Below, piece after piece: positions 1 to 64,000 of a stretch of DNA of 64,000 nt. The stretch lies in contig NW_027361684.1 in assembly GCF_039654945.1 (NCBI RefSeq), forward strand, positions 32,240,001 through 32,304,000, given 5' to 3'. The notes beneath the pieces were generated by a model. It worked only from the letters and a program-made list of their open reading frames with translations. It was not told where the DNA came from and did no database searches. The stretch comes from Dendrobates tinctorius (lineage: Eukaryota). Made by a program: the position numbers and the translations under genes. The stretch's first letter is position 1. Each line of letters begins with the position of its first letter.

Positions 1-790
1 TGCCTAAACAGTGGAAACCCCCATAAGTGACACCATTTTGGAAACTAGACCCCCCAAGGAACTTATCTAGATGTGTGGTGAGAACTTTCAACCCCCTGGT
101 GTTTCACTAAAGTTTATAACGCCCGGGTGTGAAAATAAAAAATCATATTTTTTCCACAAATATGATCTTTTAGTCCCCAATTTTTTATTTTCCCATGGGT
201 AACAGGAGAAATTGGACCCCAAAAGTTGTTGTCCAATTTGTCCTAAGTACGCTGACACCCCATATGTGGGGGTGAACCACTGTTTGGACACACAGCAGAG
301 CTCGGAAGGAAAGGAGCGCAGTTTGACTTTTTTAAAACAAAATTGGCTGGAATTGAGATCGGACGCCATGTCGCCTTTGGAGAGCCCCTGATGTGCCTAA
401 ACAGTGGAAACCCCCCACAAGTGAAACCATTTTGGAAACTAGACCCCCTAAGGAACTTATATAGATGTGTGGTGAGCACTTTTAATCCCCAAGTGCGTCA
501 CAGAAGTTTATAAAAAAATCATATTTTTTCACAAAAATGATCTTTTTGCCCCCAAATTTTTATTTTCCCAAGGGTAACAGTAGAAATTCAACCCCAAAAG
601 TTGTCCAATTTGTCCTGAGTACGCCGATACTCTATATGTGAGGGTAAATCACTGTTTGGGCGCACAGCAGAGCCTGGAAAGGAAGGAGCACCGTTTGACT
701 TTTCCAAAGCAGAATTGGCTGGAATTGAGATCGGATGCCATGTCACGTTTGTAGAGCCCCTTATGTGCCTAAACAGTGGAAACCCCCCAA
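1..790 (+). repeat. ~390-bp tandem satellite units
   Basis: Marker GGAACTTAT.TAGATGTGTGGTGAG recurs at ~58 and ~452; GGAATTGAGATCGG recurs at ~349 and ~721. Confidence 0.85.
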
Positions 791-792
791 TT

Positions 793-1062
793 CTAACTCC
801 AACCCTAACCCCAACACACCCCTAACCCTAATCCCAGCTCTAACCATAACCCTAACCACAAACCTAACTCTAACACACCCCTAACCCTAATCCCAACCCT
901 AACCCTAATCCCAACCCTAACCCTAATCTAAACCCTAACTTCAACTCTAGCCCCAACCCTAACCTTAACTTTAGCCCCAACCCTAACCATAACTTTAGAC
1001 CCAACCCTAACCCTATCTTTAGCCCCAAACCTAACCCTAACTTTAGCCCAACTCTAACCCTA
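793..1062 (+). repeat. Degenerate telomere-like (CCCTAA)n tract
   Basis: Many CCCTAA, CCCCAA, CCATAA and CTCTAA hexamers. Confidence 0.9.
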
Positions 1063-1666
1063 ATGTGAAAATGGAAATAAAACCTTTTTTAATATTATTA
1101 TTTTTCCCTAACTAAGGGGATGGTAAAGGGAGGTTTGATTTACTATTTTTTTTATTTTGATCACTGTGATAGGGTCTATCACAGTGATTAAAATGAACCA
1201 ATAGGAACAAATCTCCTATTGTTGCTGGGTGCCGGCTGGCAGATCTCGGCGGGTGCACTGTTCATGTGCCCACCATGTTCTCCCGGAAGAAGCTGGTGGC
1301 CTGGGGACTTCAGGGGTGCCTGCAGGGACAACGGAGGTACCGGGGGAAGATCGGGGACCCTATTTCTCTCTCCTCTGATGTGCAATCACATCAGAGGAGA
1401 GAGAAATTAAATGGCACATCGGACTTTTTTTGCGCTCGCCGTTATACTGTTAATAATGGCGATCGCAACATCGGGGTTGGTAAAAACCGACTTGAATCAT
1501 GTTCTCTGGCATCTCGGCTACCCCCGGCAACCGAGATCCCAGAGAAATTCCGACGGAGGGGGCGCTGTAACCTCAAACCTCAGCGCCGTTAAAAAGCAGT
1601 GCTGTGGTTTAAGTACCCTTAACTACCGCCGTTAAAACGTGTATCGGCGGTTATTAAGGGGTTAAA

Positions 1667-1902
1667 TGTAACTCTCATCATTCTCCCCTGCTCACGCCGA
1701 TCGCCGGTAGAGCAGAGGAGAATGACGAGAGCTGTGTTCAGCATCCAGCGCCGGGGAACAGCGCTTACTGCAAAGCCTCTTCCCTGGCGGCCATCCGTGT
1801 GGTAGTGATGCAGCACATGCATGCCACATGTGTGCTGCAAGTATTACACACACGGACACTGACATCTCCGGTACAATAAATATCAGGACGTGTGAAAGAG
1901 GC
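1667..1902. mobile_element. Right end of a Harbinger-type MITE
   Basis: Ends in GTGTGAAAGAGGC, resembling the GGCT...CACAC termini at 46225 and 49056. Confidence 0.45.
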
Positions 1903-2992
1903 ACACGCTAAAAGACGCTTTTTATTGTAAAAAAAAATAGTTTTTACATCACCACATTTTGAGAGATATAATTTTGCATATTTTGGCCCACAGAGTCATG
2001 TGAGGTCTTGTTTTTGCAGGACAAGCTGACTTTTCTATTGGTACCATTTTCGGGCACATGACTTTTTTTGATCGCTTTTTATTACGATTTTTGGGAGGCA
2101 GAATGAACAAAAACTAGCAATTCATGAATTTCTTTTGGGGGGGTGTTTATACCATTCCGCGTGTGGTAAAATTGATAAAGTGGTTTTATTCTTCAGGTTA
2201 TATCATTTTTATGTTTTGGTGCTTTTATACAATAAAAACTATTTTATATAAAAAATAATTATTTTTGCATCGCTTTATTCTGAGAGCTCTAACTGTTTTT
2301 TTTTTGCTTATGATGCTGTATGGTGGCTCGTTTTTTGCGAGACAAGATGACGTTTTTAGCGGTACCACGTTTATTTATATCTGTCTTTTTGATAGGCGGT
2401 ATCATGATAAAGCATTGTTTTTTTGCCTTTGCCTTGTTTTTTTTCATAGGGTTCACTAAAGGGGTTAACTAGTGTGACAGTTTTATAGGTTGGGTCGTTA
2501 CGGACGCAGTGATACCAAATATGTGTACTTTTGTTGTTTATATTTTTTTCATTCAAATATTTATTTATTGATATAATAAATATTGATTTTTTTATTATAA
2601 TTTTTTTAAAAAAAATATTTTTGCAATTATTTAAAAAAAAATTTGTTTCATTCTTACTTTTACACTTTGTTCCTCTATGGGACACTCATTTTGTGCAGGC
2701 TGATCGCTTATATGGCATGCAGATGAAGCAGCATCTGGATGCCATATAAGCTGTCAGTGCTACACTTTCTGCACACTGACTTGTGAGACTTCCTGACATG
2801 CTCTGCGTATGACAGGAAGTTTCTTAGCTCTGGTAACCCAAATGTTGTCATGACATCATCGGGTTATCATAGCAGCAATCGGGACCCCGCGTTACGCTGC
2901 GGGGTCTCCAATCCAAAGGCAGAGAGGCTCTCAGCCCCTCTGCCGGCACCAGAACGCTGCAATCTTGTTTGATCACAGCAGGAATAGTGTAC
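1903..2992 (+). mobile_element. AT-rich tail segment of another TTAA-element copy, cut off by a Gypsy LTR
   Basis: Collinear with 38600-39093 plus 40002-40310 (e.g. TTTTTATTG.AAAAAATAGTTTTT.CATCACCACATTTTGAGAG; GTGCAGGCTGATCGCTTATATGGCATGCAGAT). Confidence 0.75.
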
Positions 2993-3434
2993 TGTAACGG
3001 GGTCTTCTGTGCTGTAATACCTCTTACATTACCACCCCGTTTCTTAGAATGTCCACTCTGCTTTTCCTCACTTCTGTATGAAGGGCGCTGGCTCGAAAGG
3101 CTTTGTAACATGGGAACATATAAAAGATCACTGCTTCTTCACATATTTCCAATGTGACAACATTTTACTCATCGGTCTCAGAATATATATAGATACAGAG
3201 AATAGGACTATCAATATGTGGCGGGCCAGTAGATAACAGGCTCCAATTAAGACGCCAGACGTTCAATACAATAGCCATGGGATTTACAAAGGTGGGGGGA
3301 GGTCAGAAGTGGGATATCTCGTTTACCTCTGCCCAGGGGGCCAGCGGGTCGGTTGCTGCATTAAGGGCATACATCTCACATTACACCTATCGTACATGCA
3401 TCTCCTATTTGGGGTGCTGGGGGGTTCTGTAACA
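2993..3434 (-). repeat. 3' LTR of Gmr1-like element 1
   Basis: Direct repeat of 9217-9658 with about 22 substitutions by eye. Confidence 0.92.
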
Positions 3435-3450
3435 TGGCTCCCCCTTTTCA
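3435..3450 (-). promoter_or_regulatory. Polypurine tract
   Basis: TGAAAAGGGGGAGCCA on the minus strand, abutting the 3' LTR. Confidence 0.8.
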
Positions 3451-9216: not shown

Positions 9217-9658
9217 TGTAACGGGGTCTTCTGTGCTGTAATACCTCTTACATTACCACCCCGTTTCTCAGGAGGTCCACTGTGCTTTTCCTCACTTCTG
9301 TATGAAGGGCGCTGGCTCGAAAAGCTTTGTAACATGGGAACATATAAAAGATCACTGCTTCTCCACGTATTTCCAGTGTGACAACATTTTACTCATCGGT
9401 CTCAGAATATATATAGATACAGAGGACAGGACAATCAATATGTGGCGGGCCAGTAGATAACAGGCTCCAATTAAGACGCCAGATGTACATAACAATAGCC
9501 GTGGGATTTACAAAGGTGGGGGGAGGTCAGAAGTGAGATATCTCGTTTACCTCTGCCCAGGGGGACAGCGGGTCAGTTGCTGGATTAAGGGCATACATCT
9601 CACATTACTCCTATCGTACATGCATCTCCTATTTGGGGTGCTGGGGGATTCTGTAACA
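9217..9658 (-). repeat. 5' LTR of Gmr1-like element 1
   Basis: Direct repeat of 2993-3434; adjacent to the PBS. Confidence 0.92.
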
Positions 9659-9668
9659 CGGGCTGCTA

Positions 9669-28175: not shown

Positions 28176-29827
28176 ACTACAAAGTTTACCAGGCAGGTAA
28201 ACAGAAACCTGAACAGATTTATCATGTAAATCTGATAAAGCCCTGGAAGGATCGGTCTGCCTTGTCAGCGGAGCTGGCCCGTCCTGTCTGCTCGCATGCC
28301 GTACCGGAGGTACGGGTTGCAGAGACTCTCTCGGAGCGGCAAAAGACTGAAGTCAGGCAGTTTCTACTTCACAACCAAAAGTTTTTCTCAGAAAAACCCG
28401 GGCAGACTATGCTAATGAAACATGACATCTTAACGGAACCTGGTGTCACAGTTCACGTAAAGCCCTACCGAATCCCGGAAGCGCGCCGTGAAGTCGTTTC
28501 CCGAGAAGTGAAGGCAATGTTAGAGTTAGGAGTCATTGAGGAATCGCACAGTGCATGGTCCAGCCCGATTGTGCTAATTCCTAAACCGGACGGCACCATC
28601 CGGTTCTGCAATGACTTCAGGAAACTGAATGCGGTCTCAAAATTTGATGCCTACCCTATGCCCCGGGTCAACGAGTTAATAGATCGGTTAGGAAAAGCCC
28701 GGTATATTACGACCCTAGACCTAACAAAGGGGTATTGGCAGATCCCTCTGGCTGAGGCTGCCAAAGAAAAGACGGCATTTGCTACGCCGGAAGGTTTATT
28801 TCAGTATGTGTATATGCCGTTTGGACTGCACGGGGCACCGGCGACCTTCCAGAGACTGATGGATTGAGTCTTGAGGCCACATAGGCGGTATGCTTCGGCC
28901 TATTTGGATGACATTGTCATTTACAGCTTGGACTGGGAGACTCATCTCCAGAAAGTACAAGCTGTGATTGACGACCTGTGGGAGGCAGGTCTAACCGCGA
29001 ACCCCAAGAAATGTCACATCGGGCTAGAAGAAGCCCGGTATTTGGGGTATGTAATTGGGAGGGGTGTTGTTAAACCCCAGGTTGATAAGATTCAGGCGGT
29101 TCAGGACTGGCCACAACCTGTCAACAAGAAGCAGGTGCAAGCCTTCCTGGGGATCGCCGGCTATTATCGCCGGTTCATACCCAATTTTGCAGCCATCGCT
29201 ACCCCCCTGACGGATCTTACAAAAGGGAAAGACTCCGTCATGATTAAATGGAGTTTAGCGGCTGAAGAAGCCTTCCATAGCCTAAAACGGGCACTTTGCT
29301 CTCAGCCCGTACTGGTGACTCCGGACTTCCGCAGCGAGTTTGTGGTACAAACGGATGCCTCTGATACTGGTATCGGGGCCGTACTCTCACAAGTGAGGGA
29401 CGGAGTGGAACATCCAGTCCTCTATCTCAGCAGGAAGCTGAATAAACACGAGCAAAGGTATGCCGTCATAGAAAAAGAGTGCCTCGCCATTAAGTGGGCT
29501 CTAGAGGCCCTCAAATATTACCTGGTGGGCCGAAAGTTCAAGCTGATCACTGACCATGCCCCTCTCAAGTGGATGCACTTGAACAAGGAACGGAATAGCC
29601 GGGTGACCCGGTGGTTCCTTGCCCTGCAGGCCTACACTTTTACGGTGGAGCACCGCCCAGGGGTACAGATGGGAAATGCAGATGCCCTGTCCCGAGTGCA
29701 CTGTTTGGCGGGTGTCATTGCTCGACCGGAGTGGTCTGAGCAGAAGGGGGGGATATGTGAGAATCATATGGGAATAGTGGATGAGGGCAGGTGTATCTCA
29801 CCCAGATTCCTTTCCTATGTGGCCTAG
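28133..29827 (+). pseudogene. pol: INT end, RT and RNase H (in-frame TGA at 28865-28867)
   Basis: RFCNDFRKLN; DLTKGYWQ; YLDDIVIYS; QTDASDTGIG; EKECLAIKW; frame ends inside the 3' LTR. Confidence 0.93.
29738..29755 (+). promoter_or_regulatory. Polypurine tract
   Basis: GAGCAGAAGGGGGGGATA abutting the 3' LTR. Confidence 0.85.
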
Positions 29828-36573: not shown

Positions 36574-38299
36574 TTTGTCAACCAGATCATTTCTATTGTG
36601 AAAAATATCAAGACATATTCATATTTTGATTTTGTTTTTAGAATCAATCAAGACTAAATGGAATAAAAACACAAGTAAAAAAAAATATACGTCCTTGAAA
36701 ACCAAATACAAAATCAGAGCTATTATCACTTGTTTACTAATGTTTACATACATGAATACACATATAAATCAAAACTATCTGACTGCTCGTGTATTGCACC
36801 AAAATTCAGAGAATCACATCATTTATATATAGTTATCTAGGACCCCTTTGTTTTTCAGAATTAAAATGTAACACTTTGGGTAGATGAGTTAGGAGATTTT
36901 ACAGGTTTATGACAAGTAAATGAACAGACGGTCTATCATAGTGTTTCTGAAAAGGCTTTCCGATGCAATCCGTGGAGTGGTTAACTATTGTTCCCATAGC
37001 TTTATCAATATTTTGAGGGTGTTTCTTTTAACCCCTTTACTCCCAAGGGTGGTTTGCATGTTAATGAAGAGACCAATTTTTACAATTCTGACCGCTGTCC
37101 CTTTATGAGGTAATTACTCTGGAATGCTTCCATGGATCCCGATGATTCTGACGATGTTTTCTAGTGACATAATGTACTTCATGATAGTGGTAAAATTTGT
37201 TTGATATGACTTGCGTTTATTTGTGAAAAAAATGGAAATTTGGCTAAAATTTTGAAAATTTTGCAATTTTACATCTTTGAATTTTCATGCCCTTAAAACA
37301 GAGAAATATGTCACACAAAATAGTTGATAAATAACATTTCCCACATGTCTACTTTACATCAGCACAATTTTGGAACCAACATTTTTTTTTGTTAGGAAGT
37401 TATAAGGGTTAAAAGTTGACCAGTGATTTCTCATTTTTAAAGCACCATTTTATTTTAGGGACCATATCACATTTGAAGTCATTTTGAGGAATCTATATGA
37501 TAGAAAATTCCCAAAAGTGACACCATTCTAAAAACTGCACCCCTGAAGGTGCTCAAAACCACATTCAAGAAGTTTATTAACCCTTCAGGTGCTTCACAGG
37601 AATTTTTGGAATGATTAAAAAAAATGAACTTTTAACTTTTTTTCACAAAAAATTTACTTCAGATCCAATTTGTTTTATTTTACCAAGGGTAACAGGAGAA
37701 ATTGGACCCTAAAAGTTGTTGTGCAATTTGTCCTGAGTATGCTGATATCATATATATGCAGGTAAACCACTGTTTGGGCGCATGGTAGAGCTTGGAAGGG
37801 AAGGAGCGCTGCTTGACTTTTCAATGCAAAATTGGCTGGAATTGAGATCGGATGCCATGTCGCGCTTGGAGAGCCCCTGATGTACCTAAACAGTGGAAAC
37901 ACCACACAAATGACACCATTTTGGAAAGTAGACCCCCTAAGGAACTTATCAAGATGTGTGGTGAGCATTTTGAACCTCCAAGTGCTTCACAAAAGTTTAT
38001 AATGTAGAGCCATAAAAATGAAAAATCTTATTTTTTTCACAAAAATGATCTTTTCTCCCCCAATTTTTTATTTTCCCAAGGGTAACAGGAGAAATTGGAC
38101 CCCAAAAGTTGTGCAATTTGTCCTGAGTATGCTGATTCCCCATATGTGGGGGTAAAACACTGTTTGGGCGCATGGCAGAGCTTGGAAGGGAAGGAGCACC
38201 GTTTGACTTTTTCAACTCAGAATTGGCTGGAATTGAGATCAGATGCGTGTCGTGTTTTGGAGAGCCCCTAATGTGCCTAAACAGTGGAAACACCCCAAT

Positions 38300-38476
38300 T
38301 CTGACTCCAACCCTAACCCCAACACACCCCTTACCCTAATCCCAACCCTAACCATAATCCTAACCACAAACCTTGCCCTAACACACCCCAAACCCTAATC
38401 CCAACCCTAACCCCAATCCCAACCCTTTCCCTAAACCTAACTATAGCCGCAACCCTAACCTTAGCCCTAACCCTAA
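38300..38476 (+). repeat. Degenerate telomere-like (CCCTAA)n tract
   Basis: CCCTAA/CCCCAA hexamers at the same position in the element as 793-1062. Confidence 0.88.
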
Positions 38477-39095
38477 TGGGAAAATGGAAATAAATACATT
38501 TTATTTTATTATTTTTCCCTAACTAAGCAGGTAATAAAGGGGGGTTTGATTTACTATTAATAACTGGATTTTATAGGGGGTATTTATGTTTGGCAGCTGT
38601 CACACACTAAAATATGCTTTTTATTGCAAAAAATAGTTTTTGCATCACCACATTTTGAGAGCTATAATTTTTCCATATTTTGGCCCACAGAGTCATTTGA
38701 GGTCTTGTTTTCTGTGGGACAAGTTGACGTTTTTATTGGTACCATTTTCGGGCGTATGACATTTTTTGATTGCTTTTTATTCTTATTTTTGGGAGGCAGA
38801 ATGAACAAAAAACAGCAATTCATGAATTTCTTTGGGGGGGCATTTATACCGTTCAGCATGTGGTAAAATTGATAAAGCAGTTTTATTCTTCAGGTCAGTA
38901 AGATGACAGCGATACCTCATTTATATTTTTTTTGTTTTGGTGCTTTTATACAATAAAAACTATTTTATAGAAAAAATAATTATTTTTGCATCGCTTTATT
39001 TTGAGAGCTATAACTTTTTTTATTTTTCTGGTGATGGAGCTATATGGCAGCTTGTTTTTTGCTGGACAAGATGACGTTTTCAGCGGTACCAAGTA

Positions 39096-39999
39096 CCGTA
39101 TTTTTCGCTTTGTAAGACGCACTTTTTTTCCCCCAAATTTGGGGGGAAAATAGGGGTGCGTCTTACAATGCAAACATACGTTTTTTTGTGCTGCCGCTGC
39201 GGGTGTCCGATACTTGCCGCCACCGCGCTGGGTCCTCCGGGTGCTGCTGCTGCCGTGCTGGGTCCCCCAGTGCCTGCCGCCGCCGTCGGGCTCTGTCCTG
39301 TGCTGCGTGGGGGGCTCTGCCGTTCCATCCATGCCTGTGCGGTGGCTTGCTTCCTGGAAAATGGCCATCGCGCAAGCGCAGGTGGAAATCTCGCATTGAA
39401 ATCTCGGGAGATGAGATTTCAGCGCTGAAATCTCATCTCCCGAGATTTCAATGCGAGATCTCCATCTGCGCTTGTGCGGCGGCCATTTTCCAGGAAGCAA
39501 GCCACCGCACAGGCATGGATGGAACGGCAGAGCCCCCCACGCAGCACGGGACAGAGCCCGACGGCGGCGGCAGGCACCGGGGGACCCAACGCGGCGGCGG
39601 CAGCACCCGAGGGACCCAGCACGGCGGCAGCATCCAAAGGACCCAGTGCGGCGGCGGCAGCAGCACCCGGAAGACCCAGCGCGGTGGCAGTAGCACCCGG
39701 AGGACCCAGCACGGTGGCAGCAGCACCAGGTACAGAGTGGGCGGCAGCACCCGGGGACAGAGTGGGCGACAGCACCCCGGGGACAGAGTGGGCGACAGCA
39801 CCCCAGGGACAGAGTGGGCGACAGCACCCTGGGGACAGAGTGGGCGACAGCACCCCGGGGACAGACCGGTAAGCAATAAGACGCCTGGATTATAAGAAGC
39901 ACCACCATTTTATTAAAAAAAACATTTTTTCTTATTTTTCTCCTCAAAATTTGGGGTGCGTCTTATAATCCGGAGCGTCTTATAAAGCGAAAAATACGG
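39096..39999. mobile_element. TA-flanked pogo/Tigger-type MITE with GC-rich palindrome and minisatellites
   Basis: TA|CCGTATTTTTCGCTTT...AAAGCGAAAAATACGG|TA; ~200-bp-arm palindrome centred on AGCGCT (39421-39426); 29-30-bp tandem repeats at 39595-39870. Confidence 0.88.
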
Positions 40000-40324
40000 T
40001 ATATTTATATCCGTCTTTTTGATCGCGTGTTATTCCACTTTTTGTTCAGCGGTATGATGATAAAGCATTGTTTTTTTGCCTTGAAATATTGATTTTTTTT
40101 AATTATTATTTAATTATTTTTTATATATTTTTACAATGTTTTAAACTTTTTTTAATTTTATTCTTACTTTTACATTGTGTCCCACTATGGGACACTTTTT
40201 TTGTGCAGGCTGATCGCTTATATGGCATGCAGATCTGCATGCCATATAAGCAATCAACACTACATTCTGTGCACACTGACTTGAGAGACTTCCTGACATG
40301 CACTGCACATGAATCTGAATCCAG

Positions 40325-46576: not shown

Positions 46577-47296
46577 TGTAGCACCGGCGTCCCTGCACGC
46601 TTCCTCCCTCCCCCAGCAGAGATGTCAACTTACTCACTGCCATGGCCCCCATCCCGCACTTCCTCCTCCTTCCCTTGCTGTGGGTGCTCAGACACTTATT
46701 ATTTAAGACACCTCCACCTGATGGTAGGTACCAGAGCAAAGTGTTTAGTCAGTTAGTCTGCATGCTCTAGTTCTCAGGTCCCTGGTCATGTGTATACCCA
46801 CCATGTACCCACCAGTTCTCGCTACTACCTGTCTGTACTCTCTTGCTCTGCTCATTCCTGCTTGTGTCATCCAGTGTACCTGCCTACACCTGCCATGCCA
46901 GTCTGTATACCACCCGTACCTGCCTGCACCTGCCTTGCCAGTCTGTATATCAGCCGTACCCGACTGCACCTTCTGTGCCAGTCTGCATACCAGCCATACC
47001 TGCCTGCACTTTCTGTGCCAGTCTGCATACCAGCTGTACCTGCCTGCACTTTCTGTGCCAGTCTGTATACTAGCCGTACCTGCCTGCACATTTCTTGTCT
47101 TACAATCAAGGCCATTCCATCTTCCTGCCTATTTGGTGGTCAGCTCCCGTGTGTCCGAGGTCTGTCCTGGAGTCCATCAGGGGCTAAGTCAAACATCATT
47201 AGGGGCTCTAATGAATAGTCAAGTGTTCACCTAGTCATGCTCCTTCAAGCTCTCTTTGGGCCACAGCACAGTGGTTCCACTACCACGGATGTTACA
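46577..47296 (+). mobile_element. Solo LTR with internal 40-bp minisatellite (~46875-47090)
   Basis: TGTA...TTACA termini; 5-bp TSD CATCA at 46572-46576 and 47297-47301. Confidence 0.85.
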
Positions 47297-47375: not shown

Positions 47376-49022
47376 CAGTCATATGTTAAAGTTTGGGCAC
47401 CCCTATTAATGTTAACCTTTTTTCTTTATAACAATTTTGGTTTTTGCAACAGCTATTTCAGTTTGATATATCTAATAACTGATGGACTCAGTTATATTTC
47501 TGGCTTCAAATGAGGTTTATTGTACTAACAGAAAATGTGCAATCTGCATTTAAACAAAATTTGACCGGTGCAAAAATATGGGCACCTCAACATAAAAGTG
47601 ACATTAATATTTTGTAGATCCTCCTTTTGCAAAAATAACAGCCTCTAGTCTCTTCCTGTAGCTATTAATGAGTTACTGGATCATGGATGAAGGTATTTGG
47701 GACCATTCCTGTTTACAAAACAATTCCAATTCAGTTAAGTTTGATGCTCGCCGAGCATGGACAGTCCGCTTCAAATCATCCCACAGATGTTCAATGATAT
47801 TCTGGTCTGGGGACTAGGATGGCCAGTCCAGAACATTGTAATTGTTCCTCTGCATGAATGCCTGAGTAGATTTGGAGTGGTGTTTTGGATCATTGTCTTG
47901 CTGAAATATCCATCCCCTGCGTAACTTCAACTTTGTCACTGATTCTTGCACATTATTGTCAAGAATCTGCTGATACTGAGTTGAATCCATGCGACCCTCA
48001 ACTTTAACAAGATTCCCGATGCCGGCATTGGCCACACAGCCCCAAAGCATGATGGAACCTCCACCAAATTTTACTGTGGGTAGCAAGTGTTTTTCTTGGA
48101 ATGCTGTGTTTTTTAGCCTCCATGCATAACGCCTTTTTGTATGACCAAACAACTCAATCTTTGTTTCATCAGTCCACAGGACCTGCTTCCAAAATGTAAC
48201 TGGCTTGTCCAAAAGTGCTTTTGCATACCTCAGGCGACTCTGTTTGTGGCGTGCTTGCAGAAACGGCTTCTTTCGCATCACTCTCCCATACAGCTTCTCC
48301 TTGTGCAAAGTGCGCTGTATTGTTGACTGATGCACAGTGACACCATCTGCAGCAAGATGATGCTGCCGGTCTTTGGAGGTGGTCTGTGGATTGTCCTTGA
48401 CTGTTCTCACCATTCTTCTCTGCCTTTCTGATATTTTTCTTGGCCTGCCACTTCTGGGCTTAACAAGAACTGTACCTATGTTCTTCCATTTCCTTACTAT
48501 GTTCCTCACAGTGGAAACTGACAGGTTAAATCTCTGAGACAACTTTTTGTATCCTTCCCCTGAAAAGCTATGTTGAATAATCTTTGTTTTCAGATCATTT
48601 GAGAGTTGTTTTGAGGAACGCATGATGCCACTCTTCATAGGAGAATCAAATAGGAGAACTACTTGCAAGTGGCCACCTTAAATACCGTTTCTCATGATTT
48701 GATACACCTGGCTATGAAGTTCAAAGCTCAATGAGGTTACAAAACCAAATCTAGTGCTTCAGGAAGTCAGTAAAAAGTAGTTAGGAGTGTTCAAATCAAG
48801 AAAATGATAAGGGTGCCCATACTTTTGCACCGGTCAAATTTTGTTTAAATGCAGATTGCACATTTTCTGTTAGTACAATAAACCTCATTTGAATCCAGAA
48901 ATATAACTGAGTCCATCAGTTATTAGATATATGAAACTGAAATAGCTGTTGCAAAAAACAAAATTGTTATAAAGAAAAAAGGTTAACATTAATAGGGGTG
49001 CCCAAACTTTAACATATGACTG
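47376..49022 (-). mobile_element. Full-length Tc1 DNA transposon with ~210-bp TIRs
   Basis: TA|CAGTCATATGTTAAAGTTTGGGCACCCC at both ends; long inverted repeats. Confidence 0.95.
47600..48623 (-). pseudogene. Tc1 DD34E transposase with a premature stop at 47814-47816
   Basis: GEGYKKLS, SGRPRK, WTDETKIELF, FQQDNDPKH, WPS*SPDQNIIEHLW. Confidence 0.93.
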
Positions 49023-51349: not shown

Positions 51350-52962
51350 TTAAAGTAAACAATTTCCATCAACAGAAAATAAGGGCCATCTCCAAAGAAC
51401 CTTACAAGTTCTGGTAGGTTGTGGTGGTGATGGCGGGAGGGCAGAATATGAGCTGGTAGGCCTAGGGTGTTGCTCAACATGTGGGTTGGAAGATGTGGAG
51501 GTAGGATTCTGGACCAAGGATTTATCCTGTTTATAACCATAATAGTGGGTTTGAGGGTATGGCTGAATGAACTCATGGGTACTGGAGTGGCCCATTTGTT
51601 CATACTCCCCAATATGGTCATGTCAAGCATACCCATGTTGGGACCAGCTTCCAACAGTGGGTCTGCTCAAGTGGCCATATTGGGCAAGTGCTGTACAATC
51701 ATAACCATCACAGGTTGGGGCTGATGTAGGGTTGGGACGGGCTGTGGCTGAGGTGCCATACATGGAGGTGGTGCAGCGATTGATCCTGCCTGCTCTTCTG
51801 GGATTCCTGGCATCTTCAGAAGGTTATTTGATGACATTTGCCAACTTTCCAAGAACAGAAAAGCAGGGTTAGGGTTGTTTGGGGGTGTGCAGGCATCAAT
51901 GAGGATTTGTATGGCACCTCTTCCCCGCAACCTCTCCTCACGTGGAATGGGCCATAAGTAGCGTGCCAGACTGCGTGTGTATGCTTCCTTCCCATCGTCA
52001 TTAACAGTTCTGGACAAATAGTGCAAAACACCCCAGTGTCCACCTGCCTCCTGTTGCCTGTTGTGGTTAGCTCCCTCCTGCACCACCCACGACATGGTAT
52101 TCCAGAAGGCTGGGGTGATGTATCCAGAGGCAAGGTTAGACTGCTGCTTTGGCCCCAGGCCTCGTCCTCTGGGTTTGCCTCCTGTGTGGCAGAAGGCTCT
52201 GCTGGTAGACGTGGTGATGGTGAATGGGTTCTGCCTGTTGGTGCCGAAGATGGGCCAGTCACTTCGTCATCTTCCCCAACTGGGTCAATGTTGACCTCAG
52301 ACTCCAAAGCTGTCTCCCTCTCTGTAAGGTTTGACTCCATTCTGCTGTTAAACACAAAGTAGAATAAAAAATATATTAAAATATGCTTGTTTAAAAAATG
52401 TGGTGTCATGCATGTACTTACGGTCTGAGATCTATGACCGGTGCAAGAAAACTGAACCTGTCATTGTGCAGATATTTCCGTTTCTTGGGGTTGTATCACC
52501 ACTCCGGCCCCAATGCTACCGTTCCCGCCGCTACTGGTCTCGGCAACTTCGCCAGCGTCTTGTGACATCAGTCACTGCAAACAAACACAACAAATGTATT
52601 AACTTTCAATCACAGTGTGTAACTTCCAAAATATAGGCTTCAATGTAATGTGGCCTGCTACTTAGCATGTGTATAGTCTGAAATATGCCACATATTACAA
52701 ACCACATCACATATGATGAGGTTATTTTAATTTAGTACCTCATGTGAAACTTTACATATTATTTTTTTATGATTGTACTTACTAATTTGTTGCTGCACCT
52801 CACGAGGTCTTTATTCAAAATCGGGGTACATTTATGTGCAGATTCTCCTCCATGTGCCTCCTTACATGCCCGGTCTGCATAGTGTGCATCCTGTTGATCC
52901 CATAGTTCTGGCCTCTCTTGCACCAGAACTATGAGTATCTCCACGTTATTGTGTGGGGCCAT
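51350..52962 (-). pseudogene. Harbinger MADF/Myb-like DNA-binding gene, three exons (52962-52783, 52574-52422, ~52341-51350)
   Basis: ILIVLVQERPELWD...Y.DR; RRWRSCRDQ; GTAAGT donors at 52782 and 52421; TTGCAG and AACAGCAG acceptors. Confidence 0.8.
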
Positions 52963-53999
52963 GATGCTGGATTCCGTGGAGGTGTTTCCTGAATTTTTCT
53001 AGACGTTGCAAGGGAAATTTGTATGCCAAAGCTTCCTGACAATGCCTGATTTAATTTCCTGTCACCTGGAGAATGCTTGCGCATTTCTCGCAAGTCACAC
53101 ACAAGGTCCATGTGTTGTCCGTTTTTTTCTCGCACCCATAGACTTGCATAGGCGAGACTCGGCCGATATACGATGTAAATCATGCAAATCACAGCATGCT
53201 GTGATTTCTCTCACACGTATAAAACGGTGATGGGAGCTGCCCCATAGATTAACATTGGTCTGAGAGCGATGCGATTTTTTTCTAGCATAGCACTCGTTCG
53301 TATTCCTCTCTAGTGTGATTTCAGCCTCAGTTTTCAAAAACGTAAGTAGTCCACACCTAAGTATATCAATAATACAATAATAATTTTTTCAAAGCAAAAA
53401 AACAAGAATCAAAAACAAACCACCTTTATTTAACACCCTTCATGACCCAGCCTATTTTGACCTTAATGACCAGGCCATTTTTTGCAATTCTGACCAGTGT
53501 CCCTTTATGAGGTAATAACTCAGAAATACTTCAACGGATCCCAGCGATTCTGAGACTGTTTTTTCGTGACATATTGGGCTTCATGTTAGTGGTAAATTTA
53601 GGTCGATAATTTTTGCGTTTATTTGTGAAAATAATGGAAATTTGGATAAAATTTTGAAAATTTTGCAATTTTCAAATTTTGAATTTTTATTCTGTTAAAC
53701 CAGAAAGTTATGTGACACAAAATAGTTAACAAATAACATTTCCCACATGTCTACTTTACATCAGCACAATTTTGGAAACAAATTTTTTTTGTTAGGAAGT
53801 TATAAGGGTTAAAAGTTGACCAGCGATTTCTCATTTTTACAACAAAATTTACAAAACCATTTTTTAGGGACCACCTCACATTTGAAGTCACTTTGAGGGG
53901 TCTATATGGCAGAAAATACCCAAAAGTGACAGCATTCTAAAAACTGCACCCCCCCAGCTACTCAAAACTACATTCAAGAAGATTATTAACCCTTCAGGT

Positions 54000-56195
54000 G
54001 CTTCACAGGAACTAAAGCAACGTGGAAGGAAAAATTGGACATTTTAGTTTTTCCAACAAAAATTTTCTTTTAGCATCAATTTTTTCATTTTTACATGGGC
54101 TACAGGATAAAATAGATCCTAAAATTTGTTGTGCAATTTCTCCTGAGTACACCGATGCCTCATATGTGGTCATAAACCACTGTTTGGGTGCACGGCAGGG
54201 CTCAGAAGGGAAGAAGCGCCATTTGACTTTTTGAATGGAAAATATGCTGGAATATTTAGCGGTTGCCATGTCGTGTTTGGAGAGCCCCTGTGTGCCTAAA
54301 CATTGGAGATCCCCCACAATTGACCCCATTTTGGAAACTAGACTCCCCAAGGAACTTATGTAGATGCATAGAATGCACTTTGAACCCCCAGGTGCTTCAC
54401 AAATTGATCCATAAAAAAAGTACTTTTTTTCACAAAAATTTTCTTTTAGCCTCAGTTTTTTCATTTTCACATAGGTAACAGGATAAAATGGATCCTAAAA
54501 TTTGTTGGCCAATTTCTCCTGAGTACGCCGATACCTCATATGTGGTCATAAACCACTGTTTGGGTGCATGGCAGGGCCCGGAAGGGAAGGAGCGCCATTT
54601 GACTTTTTGAATGGAAAATTAGCTCCAATTGTTAGCGGACACCATGTCGCGTTTGGAGAGCTCCTGTGTGCCTAAACAGTGAAAAAAAACCACAAGTGAC
54701 ACCATTTTGGAAACTAGACCTCTTAAGGAACTTATCTAGATGTGTGGTGAGCACTTTGAACCCCCAGGTGTTTCACATAAGTTTATAACGGAGAGCAGTG
54801 AAAATAGAAAAATCATTTTTTTCCTCAAAAATGATTTTTTAACCCGCTATTTTTTATTTTCACAAGGCTAACAGGAGAAATTGGACCACAAAAGTTGTTG
54901 GGCAGTTTGTCCTGAGTACACCGATACCACATATGTGGGGGGAACCACTGTTTGGGCGCATGGGAGAGCTCGGAAGGGAAGGAGCACCATTTTGGAATGT
55001 AGACTTTGATGGAATGTTCTGCGGGCCTCATATTGCATTTGCAGAGCCCCTGATGAGCTTATCTAGATGTGTAGTGAGCACTTTGAACCCCCAAGTGCTT
55101 TACCGAAGTTTATAAACGCAGAGCTGTGAAAATAAAAAATCATTTTTTTTTCTAAAAAATGATTTTAGCCCGCTATTTTTTATTTTCCCCAGGGTAACAA
55201 GAGAAATTGGACCCCAAAAGTTGTTGTTCAATTTGTCCTGAGTATGCTGGTACCCCATGTGTGGGGGGGGAATCACTGTTTGGGCGCACGGCAGGGCTCA
55301 GAAGGGAAGGAGCGCCATTTGACTTTTTGAATGGAAAATTAGCTCCAATCGTTAGCGGACACCATGTCGTGTTTGACGAGCCCTTGTATGCCTAAACGTT
55401 GGAGCTCCCCCCACAAATGACCCCATTTTGGAAACTAGACCCCCTAGGGAACTTATCTAGATGCATAGTGAGCACTTTGAACCCCAGGTGCTTCACAGAA
55501 GTTTATAACGCAGAGCTGTGAAAATTAAAAATCATTTTTTTCCTCGAAAAATGATTTTTCAGCCCGCAATTTTTTATTTTCATAAAGGTAACAGGATAAA
55601 TTGGACCCCAAAAGTTGTTGTCCAGTTTGTCCTGAGTACGCTGGTACCCCATATGTGGGGGGGAACCACTGTTCGGGCACATGTTGAGGCTCGGAAGGGA
55701 AGTAGTGACGTTTTGAAATGCCGACTTTGATGGAATGGTCTGCGGGCATCATGTTACGTTTGCAGAGCCCGTGATGCGCCTAAACAGTAGAAACTCCCCA
55801 CAAGTGACACCATTTTGGAAACTAGACCACCCAAGGAACTTATCTAGATGTGTGGGGAGCACTTTGAACCCCCAAGTGCTTCACAGAAGTTTATAACGCA
55901 GAGCCGTGAAAATAAAAAATCATTTTTTTTCCACAAAAATCATTTTTTTAGCCCCAAATTTTTTATTTTCTCAAGGGCAACAGGGGAAGATAGACCCCCA
56001 AAAGTTGTTGTGCAATTTTTCCTGAGTACGCTGATACCCCATATATTGGGGTAAACCACTGTTTGGGCACACGTTGGGGCTTGGGAGGGAGGGAGCACCG
56101 TTTGACTTTTTGAGCGCAAAATTGGCTGGAATTGAGATCGGATGCCATGTCGCATTTGGAGACGCCCTGATGTGCCTAAACAGTGGAAACACCTC
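54000..56195 (+). repeat. Tandem satellite units (~350-390 bp, mixed variants)
   Basis: ACTTAT.TAGATG marker at ~54354, 54730, 55057, 55451 and 55837. Confidence 0.85.
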
Positions 56196-56197
56196 AA

Positions 56198-56446
56198 TTC
56201 TAACTACAACCCTAACCCCAACACACCCCTAACCCCAACACACCCCTAACCCTAATCCCAACCCTAACCATAACCCTAACCACAAGCCTCACCCTAATGC
56301 CAACCCTAACCCCAACACACCCCTAACCCTAATTTTAACCCTAATTCCAACCCTAACCCTAATTCCAACCATAACCCTAATTCCAATCCTAACCCTAATC
56401 CCAACCTTATCCCTAATTCCAACCCTAATTCTAACCCTAACCCTAA
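56198..56446 (+). repeat. Degenerate telomere-like (CCCTAA)n tract
   Basis: CCCTAA, CCCCAA and TTCCAA hexamers. Confidence 0.9.
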
Positions 56447-57933
56447 TAGAAAAATAAAAATATCAATATTTTATTTATTTTATTATTTGTCCCTACCTAT
56501 GGGGGTGATAAGTGGGGGTGATTTACTATTTTTTTACTTTGATTGCTGTGCTATCAGTGATCAAAATGAATGAATGGAATCTGCGGTTTGGCAGATTCGA
56601 TGGGCGCACTGGGCATGTTCCCGCCATTTTGGAAGATGGCAGCGTCCATGATCCGGGACAGTGGGAAACCGGGAGCCACAGCGGGATTCGGAGGGTACTG
56701 GGGGGAGTGATCGGAAGGTGGGGGGAGCAGAAGGAAGGGGAGGGGGAGAAGATGATGACGGCGGCGGCAGATCACCCCTGTCACCCGGTGGTGGGGGCGA
56801 TCGCCCCCGTCAGTCGTGGGGCGGGGCGGATCGGTGTCTCCAGCCATGCCCGATACTATTTCAGCACAGGCCACGGCTGGATTGTAATATTTCATCAAAT
56901 TTCATTGATGAAATATTACTATCACTCTGATTGGCTGTTTCACTTTTAACAGCCAGTCAGAGCGATCGTAGCCACGGGAGGGTTAAGCCACCCTCCCTGG
57001 GGTGAAGCACAAAGCCTCCTTTATGTGCGGGTCGGTGACCTTTTAGTGACCCAGTTTACCCCACCCGCAGGTGGGCTATCATTTCATGATGCCAAATAGG
57101 CATCATGGGTCGGATTGGCACCGACTTTTATTACGTCTACATGGTGTCAAAGGTTGGGAAGGGGTTAAAGCATGACACATCAAACAGAGACAAACAATGC
57201 AGAGTCAAAAATTCCATAAAAACGCATGTTAGAAAAACGCACACAAAAAGCGCAAGTAATCTAATTTAAATAATAGGTGCAGAAATTATGCAACATGAAA
57301 AACTCACCAAAAGATCATCGTGATGACGAAGTCTAAAGCAAAGGTGTTAAAGGGGTTATCTCATTAATCATTTTCATAATTAATTTTCCCCTTTAGTACT
57401 TTTCAATAGCATCATTTTTTGCTCCATACAATTTATTGATTACATTTCATTAATTCTTTCTGGAGAAAATAAAAAAATTACATTTAACAATGTGCAACGT
57501 TCATTGTACAGCACAAATGCGGTTATCCTTCTGTGTGTCAGTACGATTATGGCCATACGAAGTTTATATATTTTTTGGTTTCTTTTACTATCCTTGCACA
57601 CTAAACATGCTTTGAAAAAATCTATTTTTATGTTGCCTTTTTCTGAAACTTTTTTTCATTTTTGATTGACAGAGCTATGTGAGAGCTACTTTTTTTTGCA
57701 GTACAAACTGTATATTTCAATTATACCATGTGATGTTTAGATCACTTTTTATTCCATTTTAGTATGTGGAATAACAAAAAAAGAAAATCACTATTCTTAA
57801 TTTTTTTTTTTTTCTTCATTTTATTTCTTTACTGTGTTGTCTGTGCTTTGCAATTGATTTTTTTTTTATATTTTACTATTTTTTACACAACGAACAAAAG
57901 CTATCATGCACTTGTACTCAGTTTGGTTCTTAA

Positions 57934-60381: not shown

Positions 60382-60621
60382 GATAAACACAGCTGCTGGG
60401 GGTCTAAGTCTCGACACTAATAACACTGCTTGTATAACAACCTGCACAGACCAGCGCTGTTCTACAAGAAGTTCTCAGCTTCTGCATGAGTGCACACACT
60501 GAGGGGTGTATAGATCCACACCAAAGTACACTTTATTAAAACAGCTATAACCCATAGAGACTTGGACTCTACCGGTCCTCTGCAGGTGTACCATGCCACA
60601 AAACATTATCAGATCCTTTAA

Positions 60622-63600
60622 CCCCTTCACCCCCAAGGGTGGTTTGCACGTTCATGACCGGGCCAATTTTTACAATTCTGACCACTGTACCTTTATAAGG
60701 TCATAACTCTGGAACGTCTATGGATCCCGGTGATTCTGACATTGTTTTCTCGTGACATATTGTACTTCATGTTAGTGGTAAAATTTCATTCAAATAACTT
60801 GCGTTTATTTGTGAAAAAAATGGAAATTTGGCAAAAATTTTGAAAATTTCGCAATTTTCCAACTTTGAATTTTTATGCCCTTTAATCACAGAGATACGGC
60901 ACACAAAAAACTTGATAACTAACATTTCCCACATGTTTACTTTACATCAGCACAATTTTGGAACCAAAATTTTTTTTTTGTTAGGAAGTTATAAGGGTTA
61001 AAAGTTGACCAGCGATTTCTCATTTTTGCAACACCATTTTATTTTTAGGACCACATCACATTTGAAGCCACTTTGAGGGGTGTATATGATAGAAAATACC
61101 CAAAAGTGACACCATTCTAAAAACTGCACCCCTTAAGGTGCTCAAAACCACATTCAAGAAGTTTATTAACCCTTTAGGTGCGTCACAGGAATTTTTTTGA
61201 ATATTTAAAAAAAAATGAACATCTAACTTTTTTTCACCAAAAAAATACCTCAGGTTCAATTTTTTTTATTTTACCAAGGGTAACAGGAGAAATTGGACTG
61301 CAAAAGTTATTGTGCAATTTGTCCTGAGTACGCTGATACCTGATTTGTGGGGGGGAACGACTGTTTCGGCGCATGGCAGAGCTCAGAATGGAAGGAGCGC
61401 CGTTTGACTTTTTCAATGCAAAATTGGCTGGAATTCAGATCGGACGCCATGTCACGTTTGGAGAGTCCCTGATGTACCTAAACAGTGGAAACCCCCTACA
61501 AGTGACCCCATTTTGGAAACTAGACCCCCCAAGGAACTTATCTAGATATGTGGTGAGAACTTTGAACCCACAAGGGCTTTACAGAAGTTTATAACGTACA
61601 GCGGTACAATTAAAAAATCATATTTTTTCCACAAAAATGATCTTTTCACCCCAATTTTTATTTTCCCAAGGGTAACAGGACCCTAAAAGTTATTGTGCAA
61701 TTTTTCCTGAGTATGCTGATACCCCACATGTGGGGGTAAACCACTATTTGGGCGCATGGCAGAGCTCGAAAGGGAAGCAGCGCCATTTGACGTTTTTGGC
61801 TGGAATTGAGATCGGACATCATGTCGCGATTGGAAAACCCCTGATGTACCAAAACAGTGGAAACCCCCCACAAATGACACCATTTTGGAAACTAGACCCC
61901 CTAAGGAACTTATCTAGATGTGTTGTGAGAACTTTGAACCCCCAAGGGCTTCACAGAAGTTTATAACATAAAGCCGTACAATTAAAAAATCATATTTTTT
62001 CCACAAAAATGATCTTTTCACCCTCAATTCTTATTTTTCCAAGGGTAACAGCACCCTAAAAGTTATTGTGCAATTTGTCCTGAGTACGCTGATACCCCAC
62101 ATGTGGGGGTAAACCACTATTTGGGCACATGGCAGAGCTCGGAAGGGAAGCAGCGCCATTTGACGTTTTTGGCTGGAATTGAGATCGGACACCATGTCGC
62201 GATTGGAAAACCCCTGATGTACCTAAACAGTGGAAACCCCCCACAAATGACACCATTTTGGAAACTAGACCCCCTAAGGAACTTATCTAGATGTGTGGTG
62301 AGAACTTTGAACCCACAAGGGCTTCACAGAAGTTTATAACATAAAGCCATACAATTAAAAAATCATATTTTTTCCACAAAAATGATCTTTTCACCCTCAA
62401 TTCTTATTTTTCCAAGGGTAACAGCACCCTAAAAGTTATTGTGCAATTTGTCCTGAGTACGCTGATACCCCACATGTGGGGGTAAACCACTATTTGGGCG
62501 CATGGCAGAGCTCGGAAGGGAAGCAGCGCCATTTGAAGTTTTTGGCTGGAATTGAGATCGGACACCATGTCGCGATTGTAAAACCCCTGATGTACCTAAA
62601 CAGTGGAAACCCCCCACAAATGACACCATTTTGTAAACTAGACCCCCCAAGGAACTTATCTAGATGTGTGGTGAGCACTTTGAACCCCCCAGTGCTTCAC
62701 AGAAGTTTATAACGCCCGGTCGTGAAAATAAAAAATTTGTATTTTTTCCACAAACATGATCTTTTAGTCACCATTTTTTTTATTTTCCCAAGGGTAACAG
62801 GAGAAATTGGACCCCAAAAGTTGTTGTCCAATTTGTCCTGAGCATGCTGATACCCCATATGTGGGAGAAAACTACTGTATGGGCACACGTCGGGGATCGG
62901 AAGGGAAGTAGTGACGTTTTGGAATGCAGACATTGATGGAATGGTCTGCGGGTGTCATGTTGCCTTTGGAGAGCCCCTAATGTACCTAAACAGTGGAAAC
63001 CCCCCACAAATGACCCCATTTTGAAAACTAGACCCCCTAAGGAACTTATCTAGATGTGAGGTGAGCACTTTGAACCCCCAAGGGCTTCACAGAAGTTTAT
63101 AATGCTAGGGCATGAAAATAAAAAAATCGTATTTTTTCCACAAACATGATCAATTATTCCCCAATTTTTTTATTTCCCAAGGGTAACAGGAGAAATTGAA
63201 CCCCAAAAGTTGTTGTCCAATTTGTCCTGAGTAAGCTGACACCCCATATGTGGGAGAAAACTACTGTATGGACACACGTCAGGGCTCGGAAGGGAAGTAG
63301 TGACGTTTTGGACTGCAGACTTTGATGGAATGGTCTGCGGGTGTCATGTTGCCTTTGGAGAGCCCCTAATGTACCTAAAAAGTGGAAACCCCCCCACAAA
63401 TGACCCCATTTTGAAAACTAGACCCCCTAAGGAACTTATCTAGATGTGAGGTGAGCACTTTGAACCCCCAAGGGCTTCACAGAAGTTTATAATGCCAGGG
63501 CATGAAAATAAAAAAATTGTATTTTTTCCACAAACATGATCAATTATTCCCCAATTTTTTTATTTTCCCAAGGGTAACAGGAGAAATTGAACCCCAAAAG

Positions 63601-64000
63601 TTGTTGTCCAATTTGTCCTGAGTACGCTGACACCCCATATGTGGGAGAAAACTACTGTATGGACACACGTCAGGGCTCGGAAGGGAAGTAGTGACGTTTT
63701 GGAATGCAGACTTTGATGGAATGGTCTGCGGGTGTCATGTTGCCTTTGGAGAGCCCCTAATGTACCTAAACAGTGGAAACACCCACAAATGACCCCATTT
63801 TGGAAACGAGAACCCCTAAGGAACTTATCTAGATGTGAGGTGAGCACTTTGAACCCCCAAGGGCTTCACAGAAGTTTATAATGCCCGGGCATGAAAATAA
63901 AAAAATCGTATTTTTTCCACAAACATGATCAATTAGTCCCCAATTTTTTCATTTTCCCAAGGGTAACAAGAGAAATTGGACCGTAAAAGTTGTTGTCCAA
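60622..64000 (+). mobile_element. TTAA-flanked piggyBac-like element with expanded satellite array, running off the window
   Basis: TTAA|CCCCTTCAC start; collinear with 37032 onward. Confidence 0.85.
61250..64000 (+). repeat. Tandem satellite, ~7 units (372-373 bp, then 389-390 bp)
   Basis: GGAACTTATCTAGAT at 61533, 61905, 62278, 62651, 63041, 63431 and 63820. Confidence 0.92.

What the first reader, a model, noticed from the sequence alone, without database searches (positions are those of the whole stretch)
53430..57168. Large modular non-coding TTAA transposon acting as a satellite and telomere-repeat vector
Seen: a complete 3.7-kb copy with architecture [short TIR, conserved ~600-bp left arm, variable number of ~350-390-bp units, CCCTAA tract, exchangeable right tail, TIR]. 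Five pieces occupy roughly 13 kb of this window. Unit number varies (2 at 37032, about 6 here, 7 or more at 60622). Three different right tails follow the same tract (1190-1661, 56570-57164, 38560-40310). Established: TTAA TSDs with CCC termini are piggyBac-like. Inference: a family that seeds and amplifies satellite DNA at new loci, potentially a major driver of genome size; I do not know whether it is formally described.
Basis: partly seen in the sequence, partly recalled or inferred. Interest (0 to 1): 0.7.

Follow-up and report, generated by a model that had tools for sequence, protein, structure and literature searches.

The report
Frog TTAA transposon carrying satellite repeats
This is one old copy of a very abundant non-coding jumping gene of a frog-type genome; it inserts at TTAA and carries a block of ~390-base tandem repeats plus a decayed stretch of chromosome-end-type repeats, a useful example of a kind of element that is already known.

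Summary
The described architecture is real. The window holds four copies, not five, covering about 10.3 kb (16%).

Each copy has these parts in order:
- TTAA, then a CCCCTT terminus
- a 480-bp unique arm
- a whole number of 375-394-bp units (2, 6, at least 7.5, at least 2)
- a degenerate (CCCTAA)n tract of 180-280 bp
- a 3' region

In every copy the array starts and stops at the same unit position. The tract's degenerate variants align between copies, so array and tract are inherited parts. Neighbouring units in the last copy are 96-97% identical, against 75-89% between loci, so arrays also grow in place.

"Three exchangeable tails" is only partly right:
- Tails A and C share their first 270-290 bp. 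Their distal 300-450 bp show no detectable similarity, yet both end in AAGGGG+TTAA.
- "Tail" B is a deletion derivative fused to another repeat, which also lies 240 bp beyond copy A.

Left and right ends share only 6-7 bases. A TTAA on both sides is uninformative for this superfamily. I obtained no empty site.

Contigs of four related organisms hold the arm and units in very large amounts. There is no coding capacity and no Rfam match.

This scan has already found the same family several times elsewhere in this genome. It is most likely a non-autonomous piggyBac-type family, a new member of the known class of tandem-repeat-bearing DNA transposons.

The parts
53430..53433 (+). TTAA at left edge of copy C
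53434..53918 (+). Copy C unique left arm. The terminus is mutated (CACCCTTC, against the family's CCCCTTC). It holds an internal AAGGG+TTAA motif at 53804-53812.
   Evidence: alignment; arm identities 83-84% to B and D; motif list
53919..56193 (+). Copy C array of six units of 326-394 bp. The first unit is the diverged one joined to the arm. The last stops at unit position 235.
56194..56446 (+). Copy C degenerate (CCCTAA)n tract: 45% perfect hexamers, longest perfect run 12 nt
56447..56715 (+). Copy C proximal post-tract region, homologous to copy A 1064-1355
56716..57164 (+). Copy C distal tail: GC 55%, CpG o/e 0.67, palindromes, no detectable similarity to A's distal tail. It ends in GAAGGGG.
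   Evidence: low contig depth
57165..57168 (+). TTAA at right edge of copy C
1..787 (+). Copy A array, at least 2 units, cut by the window start. The last unit stops at unit position 236.
788..1063 (+). Copy A degenerate CCCTAA tract, 91% alignable to B's tract
1064..1665 (+). Copy A 3' region. 1064-1355 is shared with C. 1356-1661 is a distal tail with CpG o/e 1.14 and a terminal hairpin. It ends in AAGGGG+TTAA at 1656-1665.
1897..2812 (+). Repeat X, 232 bp beyond copy A's right end. It is the same repeat that forms copy B's 'tail'.
37028..37509 (+). Copy B TTAA plus left arm (exact TTAACCCCTT)
37510..38295 (+). Copy B array, two units
38296..38558 (+). Copy B tract (38296-38477) plus 81 bp of post-tract. 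Family homology stops here.
38559..40312 (+). Not a family tail. It is a 42-bp junction, then repeat X (88-95% identical in blocks to 1902-2370), interrupted by a foldback-type element at about 39095-40037.
60618..61098 (+). Copy D TTAA plus left arm (exact TTAACCCCTT)
61099..64000 (+). Copy D array, at least 7.5 units, running off the window. It has two young blocks: D2-D3 at 97% (with D4 at 91-93%), and D5-D7 at 96-97%.

Best explanation
These are old copies, 11-17% apart, of a very abundant non-autonomous DNA transposon family of the piggyBac type.

Shown here:
- The family has a fixed left end (TTAA+CCCCTTCACCCCCAAGGG...).
- It has a 480-bp arm, an array made by tandem multiplication of one ~390-bp internal segment, a degenerate (CCCTAA)n tract and a CpG-rich, palindrome-rich 3' region ending in AAGGGG+TTAA.
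- Array and tract are inherited parts of the element.
- Unit number changes within the element lineage and also after insertion.

Inferred:
- Copies were moved in trans by a piggyBac-superfamily transposase that cuts and pastes at TTAA.
- Unit number changes by unequal exchange or replication slippage, perhaps helped by the 13-bp A/T hairpin in each unit.
- The tract is passive cargo.
- The 3' region is unstable (deletions, fusions, fast CpG decay). This, rather than a system of swappable modules, gives the look of 'different tails'.
For: - Three left ends start at the same base after TTAA, with unrelated upstream flanks.
- Two right ends stop at AAGGGG+TTAA, with unrelated downstream flanks.
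- The exact end motif occurs 6 times against 0.31 expected.
- The array is in phase at both borders in all copies: it starts at about unit position 237 and stops at 235-236.
- Tracts align at 82-91% although only 33-45% is perfect hexamer.
- The unit tree shows shared subtypes across loci and young local blocks in D.
- There is no Pfam domain in any ORF of the copies and no transposase in the window. There is no Rfam match.
- Arm, units and tract reach summed contig depths of about 3e5 to 6e6 in three organisms. In the fourth, arm and most units reach 2e5 to 2e6, with some unit bins and the tract lower.
- Each unit has a hairpin, with z -3.4 to -4.5 in 3 of 4 tested.
Against: - Left and right ends are complementary over only 6-7 bases, and no subterminal repeats were found.
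- The two right ends sit on distal tails with no detectable similarity.
- TTAA on both sides of C proves nothing for this superfamily.
- No empty site was obtained. The output was saturated by paralogues.
- In the A/B lineage about 1.15 kb beyond the AAGGGGTTAA end (up to 2812) was copied along with the element. Simple end-to-end transposition does not predict this.
- No cognate transposase was examined.
Confidence: 0.75

Rival explanations
1. Right ends are truly exchangeable. The family core (arm, array, tract, proximal 3' region) is mobilised together with whichever piggyBac-type right end lies downstream, through alternative end usage or chimeras made during repair. Subfamilies with different distal tails are the result.
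For: - A and C share 270-290 bp after the tract, then carry distal tails with no detectable similarity that both finish in AAGGGG+TTAA.
- The window is enriched in such end motifs, including two conserved inside the arm itself.
- C's tail is 100-1000 times less represented than the arm in contigs, and absent in organism E.
Against: - Only two right ends were seen.
- The depth drop already begins in the proximal region that A and C share, so it may reflect fast CpG-driven divergence past the 85% cut rather than different modules.
- The third 'tail' is a deletion/fusion, not a module.
Confidence: 0.3
2. At least some copies spread by DNA-level duplication of larger segments, or as part of a larger composite repeat, and not by transposition of the TTAA-to-TTAA unit.
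For: - Repeat X lies just 3' of the family DNA in both A (1897-2812) and B (38596-40312), in the same orientation.
- X is as similar between the two loci (88-95% in blocks) as their units and tracts are (87-91%).
- B looks like an A-type locus with a ~750-bp deletion that removed the AAGGGGTTAA end.
Against: - Homology between the two loci stops at 2812/40312.
- Flanks of B, C and D on the left, and of A and C on the right, are unrelated.
- A's left flank lies outside the window, so the test is incomplete.
- X could be a separate repeat with a liking for this region.
Confidence: 0.2
3. It is a rolling-circle (Helentron-type, DINE-1/pearl/DTC84-like) non-autonomous element. That class has exactly this layout of arm, central tandem repeats, microsatellite and second arm.
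For: - The layout matches DTC84: up to five core repeats with position-specific variants, a microsatellite at one array end, and a palindrome in each repeat (PMC3879986 abstract).
- Copy A has a GC-rich hairpin about 10 nt from its 3' end.
Against: - All five observed ends are flanked by TTAA with CCC/GGG termini. This fits piggyBac and not insertion between two T's.
- C's hairpins lie 45 nt or more from its end.
- No Rep/helicase remnant was seen.
Confidence: 0.05

Closest known systems
DTC84 / pearl-type tandem-repeat-containing MITEs of bivalves (PMC3879986)
   Same: - Flanks with short inverted repeats, a central array of a variable number of core repeats, and a microsatellite at one array end.
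- Position-specific repeat variants and a palindrome in each repeat.
- Every copy differs in unit number and flanks.
   Different: - Those units are much shorter and the elements are small.
- The putative target duplication is AA, and the class is now linked to Helentrons.
- Here the flanks are TTAA with CCC/GGG ends, units are 375-394 bp, elements are 1.5 to over 3.7 kb, and the microsatellite is telomere-like.
miDNA4-Xt and Xstir/Xmix of Xenopus (as summarised in PMC12628747 and PMC12054243)
   Same: Frog non-autonomous DNA transposons whose internal motif occurs once or as an array, proposed to seed and spread satellite DNA.
   Different: miDNA4 is a 300-600-bp Tc1/mariner MITE, and Xstir has short units. 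Neither is reported there with TTAA/piggyBac-type ends or a telomere-like tract.
FEDoR of Rana temporaria (PMC12054243)
   Same: A frog, ~3.5-kb, non-coding dispersed DNA element with conserved flanks and several internal tandem-repeat blocks, put forward as a way to spread repeats and enlarge the genome.
   Different: FEDoR has 22-bp repeats, paired inverted repeats of 91 and 49 bp at both sides, and target duplications that vary between copies. None of these is present here.
Non-autonomous piggyBac-type elements of vertebrates (human MER85/MER75, Xenopus TxpB-derived MITEs; from my own knowledge, not checked here)
   Same: TTAA flanks, termini starting CCC(T)TT and ending in GGG, no coding capacity, high copy number.
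   Different: Those are short and, as far as I know, have no satellite array or telomere-like tract. Sequence relatedness was not tested.
Tetris foldback transposon of Drosophila virilis (PMC4079207)
   Same: Internal tandem repeats of a DNA transposon that also form satellite arrays.
   Different: Tetris is a foldback element with long inverted arms made of the repeats. Here the array is direct and lies between unlike arms.

Membership tests
piggyBac-superfamily non-autonomous element | TTAA at both edges (target site duplication) | tested here: met
   TTAA is present at all five observed ends. Without an empty site, duplication cannot be told apart from target preference.
piggyBac-superfamily non-autonomous element | Termini 5'-CCC...GGG-3' | tested here: met
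   CCCCTT at the B and D left ends (mutated in C). AAGGGG at the A and C right ends.
piggyBac-superfamily non-autonomous element | Terminal inverted repeats of about 12-19 bp, often with subterminal repeats | tested here: inconclusive
   Only 6-7 complementary bases. Local alignment of 150-bp ends gives z of 1.5 or less. Copies are decayed and only two right ends are available.
piggyBac-superfamily non-autonomous element | Empty or excised sites with a single intact TTAA | tested here: inconclusive
Read laying on 52600-57900 in four organisms was saturated by paralogous contigs, and the upstream flank is itself repetitive.
piggyBac-superfamily non-autonomous element | A transposase-bearing relative (DDE_Tnp_1_7) with the same ends | not tested
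   There is no such ORF in the window. Intact piggyBac copies are reported elsewhere in this genome by earlier notes, but their ends were not available to me.
Tandem-repeat-containing MITE (DTC84 / miDNA4 kind) | Conserved flanks around an array whose unit number varies between copies | tested here: met
   2, 6, at least 7.5 and at least 2 units, with identical array borders.
Tandem-repeat-containing MITE (DTC84 / miDNA4 kind) | Miniature size (under about 800 bp) | tested here: not met
   Copies span 1.5 kb to over 3.7 kb.
Helentron-type non-autonomous element (DINE-1/pearl) | Insertion between two T's without target duplication | tested here: not met
   Edges read TTAA|CCCC and GGGG|TTAA at all ends. 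No symmetric T|T reading fits.
Helentron-type non-autonomous element (DINE-1/pearl) | Hairpin close to the 3' end | tested here: inconclusive
   Present about 10 nt from A's end. In C the hairpins are 45 nt or more from the end.
FEDoR (Rana temporaria) | 22-bp repeat blocks flanked by paired 91- and 49-bp inverted repeats | tested here: not met
   Units are 375-394 bp. There are no such inverted repeats.

The most novel reading that the evidence does not exclude
One non-autonomous piggyBac-type family, at roughly 10^4.5 to 10^5 copy equivalents, makes up a percent-level share of these giant frog genomes. It is the main source of both their interstitial telomere-like tracts and a ~390-bp satellite. 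It diversifies by pairing its core with different piggyBac-type right ends.
Probability: 0.25. Interest if true: 0.6.

Novelty: new member of a known kind. Interest (0 to 1): 0.4.

Why it matters
- Interstitial TTAGGG signals in frog karyotypes are often read as scars of chromosome fusions. A very abundant transposon that carries such a tract as inherited cargo gives an ordinary alternative source.
- The copies also show directly how a single internal segment of a DNA transposon becomes a tandem array that keeps growing after insertion. This is one route to satellite DNA and to genome bulk in large amphibian genomes.
- The family takes 16% of this window and is plentiful in four related organisms, so it deserves a curated consensus for repeat masking.

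Tried and rejected
- **More copies through ORF 'proteins'.** The 145-aa tail ORF and a 78-aa unit ORF gave no hits in the word-indexed protein search.
- **Public metagenome contigs.** Exact searches for two conserved motifs gave 0 hits.
- **Empty-site test.** Contigs of four organisms were laid on the locus, but the output was saturated by family copies and gave no usable joint at the edges.
- **Nested-element idea.** I asked whether the units, tract and tail form an inner element inside an outer one whose right half should follow the right end. Rejected: the downstream flanks of A and C are unrelated.
- **Large segmental duplication of loci A and B.** Homology stops at 2812/40312. The left flank of A is outside the window.
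- **CpG decay hiding homology of the distal tails.** Transition-tolerant alignment still gives z 0.9, against 17.5 for the proximal control.
- **RNA or protein origin of arm, units or tail.** No Rfam match even at E of 1 or less. No Pfam hit above cut-off; one 18.8-bit DUF832 match is noise.
- **Kolobok/T2-MITE.** Considered and rejected on end polarity. From my knowledge those read TTAA+AGGRR, whereas here it is TTAA+CCCCTT.
- **Dfam/Repbase.** Not available, so 'uncatalogued' is unproven.
Full report
**What is there**

A blastn of 53430-57168 against the window finds four related loci:
- A: 1-1665, cut by the window start
- B: 37028 to about 38558
- C: 53430-57168
- D: 60618-64000, cut by the window end

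All four lie on the + strand. Arms are 83-89% identical and whole-copy matches are about 78%, so the insertions are old. Together they cover 10.3 kb, or 16% of the window.

**Ends**

An alignment of the three left ends shows that homology starts exactly after a TTAA. The terminus reads CCCCTTCACCCCCAAGGGTGG. Copy C carries a mutated version. The upstream flanks are unrelated.

Copies A and C end in AAGGGG followed by TTAA. Their downstream flanks are also unrelated.

The exact 10-mer TTAACCCCTT occurs 6 times on the two strands, against 0.31 expected under a first-order model (maximum 2 in 300 simulations). These edges are therefore real family boundaries of the piggyBac type: TTAA outside, CCC...GGG inside.

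Three cautions apply:
- Left and right ends are complementary over only 6-7 bases. Local alignment of 150-bp ends is at chance level, and no long inverted repeats exist.
- Every piggyBac-type end is flanked by TTAA, so the matching TTAA on both sides of C does not prove that C entered as one piece.
- The arm itself holds two conserved end-like motifs: AAGGG+TTAA near arm position 380 and TTAA+CCCTT near 560. I cannot explain these.

**The array**

Arm-to-unit homology begins at about arm position 482-490, which corresponds to about unit position 237. In A, B and C the last unit stops at unit position 235-236, where the tract begins.

The array is therefore a whole number of copies of one ~390-bp segment lying between the unique arm and the tract:
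- 2 units in B
- 6 in C (one carries a deletion)
- at least 7.5 in D
- at least 2 visible in A

A maximum-likelihood tree of 17 units gives three subtypes that are shared between loci:
- A1, A2, B1, B2, C6 and D1-D4
- C3, C5 and D5-D7
- C1, C2 and C4

The master copies therefore already carried mixed arrays. Within D there are two young blocks:
- D2 and D3 are 97% identical, and D4 is 91-93% identical to them. This block has 97/99 support.
- D5-D7 are 96-97% identical, with 100/100 support.

Units at different loci are only 75-89% identical. This shows tandem duplication after insertion.

Three of four tested units fold into a 13-bp A/T hairpin (z -3.4 to -4.5). This parallels the palindrome per repeat described for DTC84 (PMC3879986).

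**The tract**

The tracts are 182-276 bp long. Only 33-45% consists of perfect CCCTAA, and the longest perfect run is 12 nt. Yet they align between copies at 82-91%, with shared variant blocks. The tract was already degenerate in the common ancestor and is carried as cargo. It was not added afresh at each locus.

**The 3' region**

A and C are clearly homologous for 270-290 bp after the tract. The control z is 17.5.

Beyond that point, A 1356-1661 and C 56716-57164 show no detectable similarity. This holds with plain scoring (z 1.1) and with transition-tolerant scoring (z 0.9). Both distal parts are richer in GC and CpG than the window: CpG o/e is 1.14 and 0.67, against 0.47. Both hold palindromes.

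Copy B follows A for 81 bp after the tract. After a 42-bp junction it runs into another repeat, X. X is itself split by a foldback-type element at about 39095-40037.

X also lies at 1897-2812, 232 bp beyond copy A's right end, in the same orientation. It is 88-95% identical in blocks between the two loci. That is as close as the A and B units and tracts are to each other.

B therefore looks like an A-type locus that lost about 750 bp, including the AAGGGGTTAA end. It follows that in the A/B lineage the DNA beyond that end was copied along. Homology stops at 2812/40312.

I cannot tell which of three readings is right:
- X belongs to a longer subfamily of the element.
- A larger segment was duplicated.
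- X is a separate repeat that tends to lie there.

'Three exchangeable tails' is thus an over-reading. What remains is two right ends on distal sequences with no detectable similarity.

**Other genomes**

Seven coded organisms hold parts of the stretch. I laid the contigs of four of them on the stretch at 85% likeness.

- Arm, units and tract (53485-56316) reach summed depths of about 3e5 to 6e6 in three organisms (X1, X5, X9). In the most distant one (X15), the arm and most units reach 2e5 to 2e6, while some unit bins and the tract are lower.
- The unique flank 57379-57732 is at 20-90.
- C's tail drops to 1e2-4e4 in the three closer organisms, and to about 3-4 in X15. There is a separate peak at 56848-57024, which is absent in X15.

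The tool warns that these figures are not copy numbers. Read only as an order of magnitude, they suggest 10^4.5 to 10^5 copy equivalents.

The drop already starts in the proximal region that A and C share. It may therefore reflect fast divergence past the 85% cut as much as different tails.

The call gave no usable joint at the element's edges, so I have no empty-site evidence of my own.

**Coding and RNA**

- There is no transposase in the window. The larger ORFs are retroelement integrase or reverse transcriptase and a Tc1 remnant.
- ORFs inside the copies have no Pfam domain and no relatives in the word-indexed protein search.
- Rfam finds nothing, even at E of 1 or less.

**Comparison with what is known**

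DNA transposons that carry and spread tandem repeats are well described:
- Xstir/Xmix and miDNA4 in Xenopus, and Helitron/Helentron arrays (review PMC12628747)
- DTC84 in a clam, with the same arm, repeats, microsatellite, arm layout (PMC3879986)
- Tetris in Drosophila (PMC4079207)
- the ~3.5-kb FEDoR of Rana temporaria (PMC12054243)

None of those has TTAA/CCC-GGG ends together with a telomere-like tract.

I found no paper describing this family. The strawberry poison frog genome paper contains none of the words piggyBac, TTAA, satellite or telomere. Dfam and Repbase could not be searched.

Earlier notes of this scan report the same family at several other places in this genome. They call the genome poison-frog-like, which I did not verify. 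One note reports a clean empty site, and others report intact piggyBac copies. I used these as leads only.

**Verdict**

This is a real and very abundant family, most likely a non-autonomous piggyBac-type element. It has an inherited, locally expanding ~390-bp array and an inherited telomere-like tract. Its 3' end is variable and poorly defined. It is a new member of a known kind.

Noticed in passing
window 1897-2812 and 38596-40312: A ~0.9-kb AT-rich repeat (X) with an internal duplication occurs twice, both times just 3' of this family's post-tract DNA and in the same orientation. It has no recognisable transposon ends and no target duplication.
   Followed up: partly
window ~39095-40037: A foldback-type element is nested in repeat X. 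Its ends start TACCGTATTTTTCGC. It has long inverted arms that contain 30-bp and 26-bp GC-rich tandem repeats, and a central palindrome near 39400-39460.
   Followed up: no
window 2993-3437 and 9217-9661: Two 445-bp direct repeats, 94.8% identical, flank minus-strand ORFs that include a 591-aa integrase. This is probably an LTR retrotransposon of about 6.7 kb.
   Followed up: no
window 25974-28175: A 733-aa ORF combines a SCAN domain, a zinc knuckle and an integrase. It is followed by RNase H/RT ORFs at 28871-29827, which suggests a Ty3/gypsy-type element with a SCAN-bearing gag.
   Followed up: no
window 57346-57362: TTAAAGGGGTTATCTC lies 180 bp beyond copy C. It has the opposite end polarity (TTAA+AGGGG) and is reminiscent of Kolobok/T2-MITE ends. 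The bin 57202-57378 is moderately repeated in the contigs.
   Followed up: no
window 37404-37412, 53804-53812, 60993-61001 and 37577, 53986, 61166: All three left arms conserve an internal AAGGG+TTAA and, 175 bp later, a TTAA+CCCTT. These look like extra piggyBac-type ends inside the arm. Their meaning is unknown.
   Followed up: partly
window 47814-48668: Remnant of a Tc1/Sleeping-Beauty-type transposase (HTH domains), on the minus strand.
   Followed up: no
window 46876-47089: A 40-bp tandem repeat, 5.3 copies, 88% matches.
   Followed up: no
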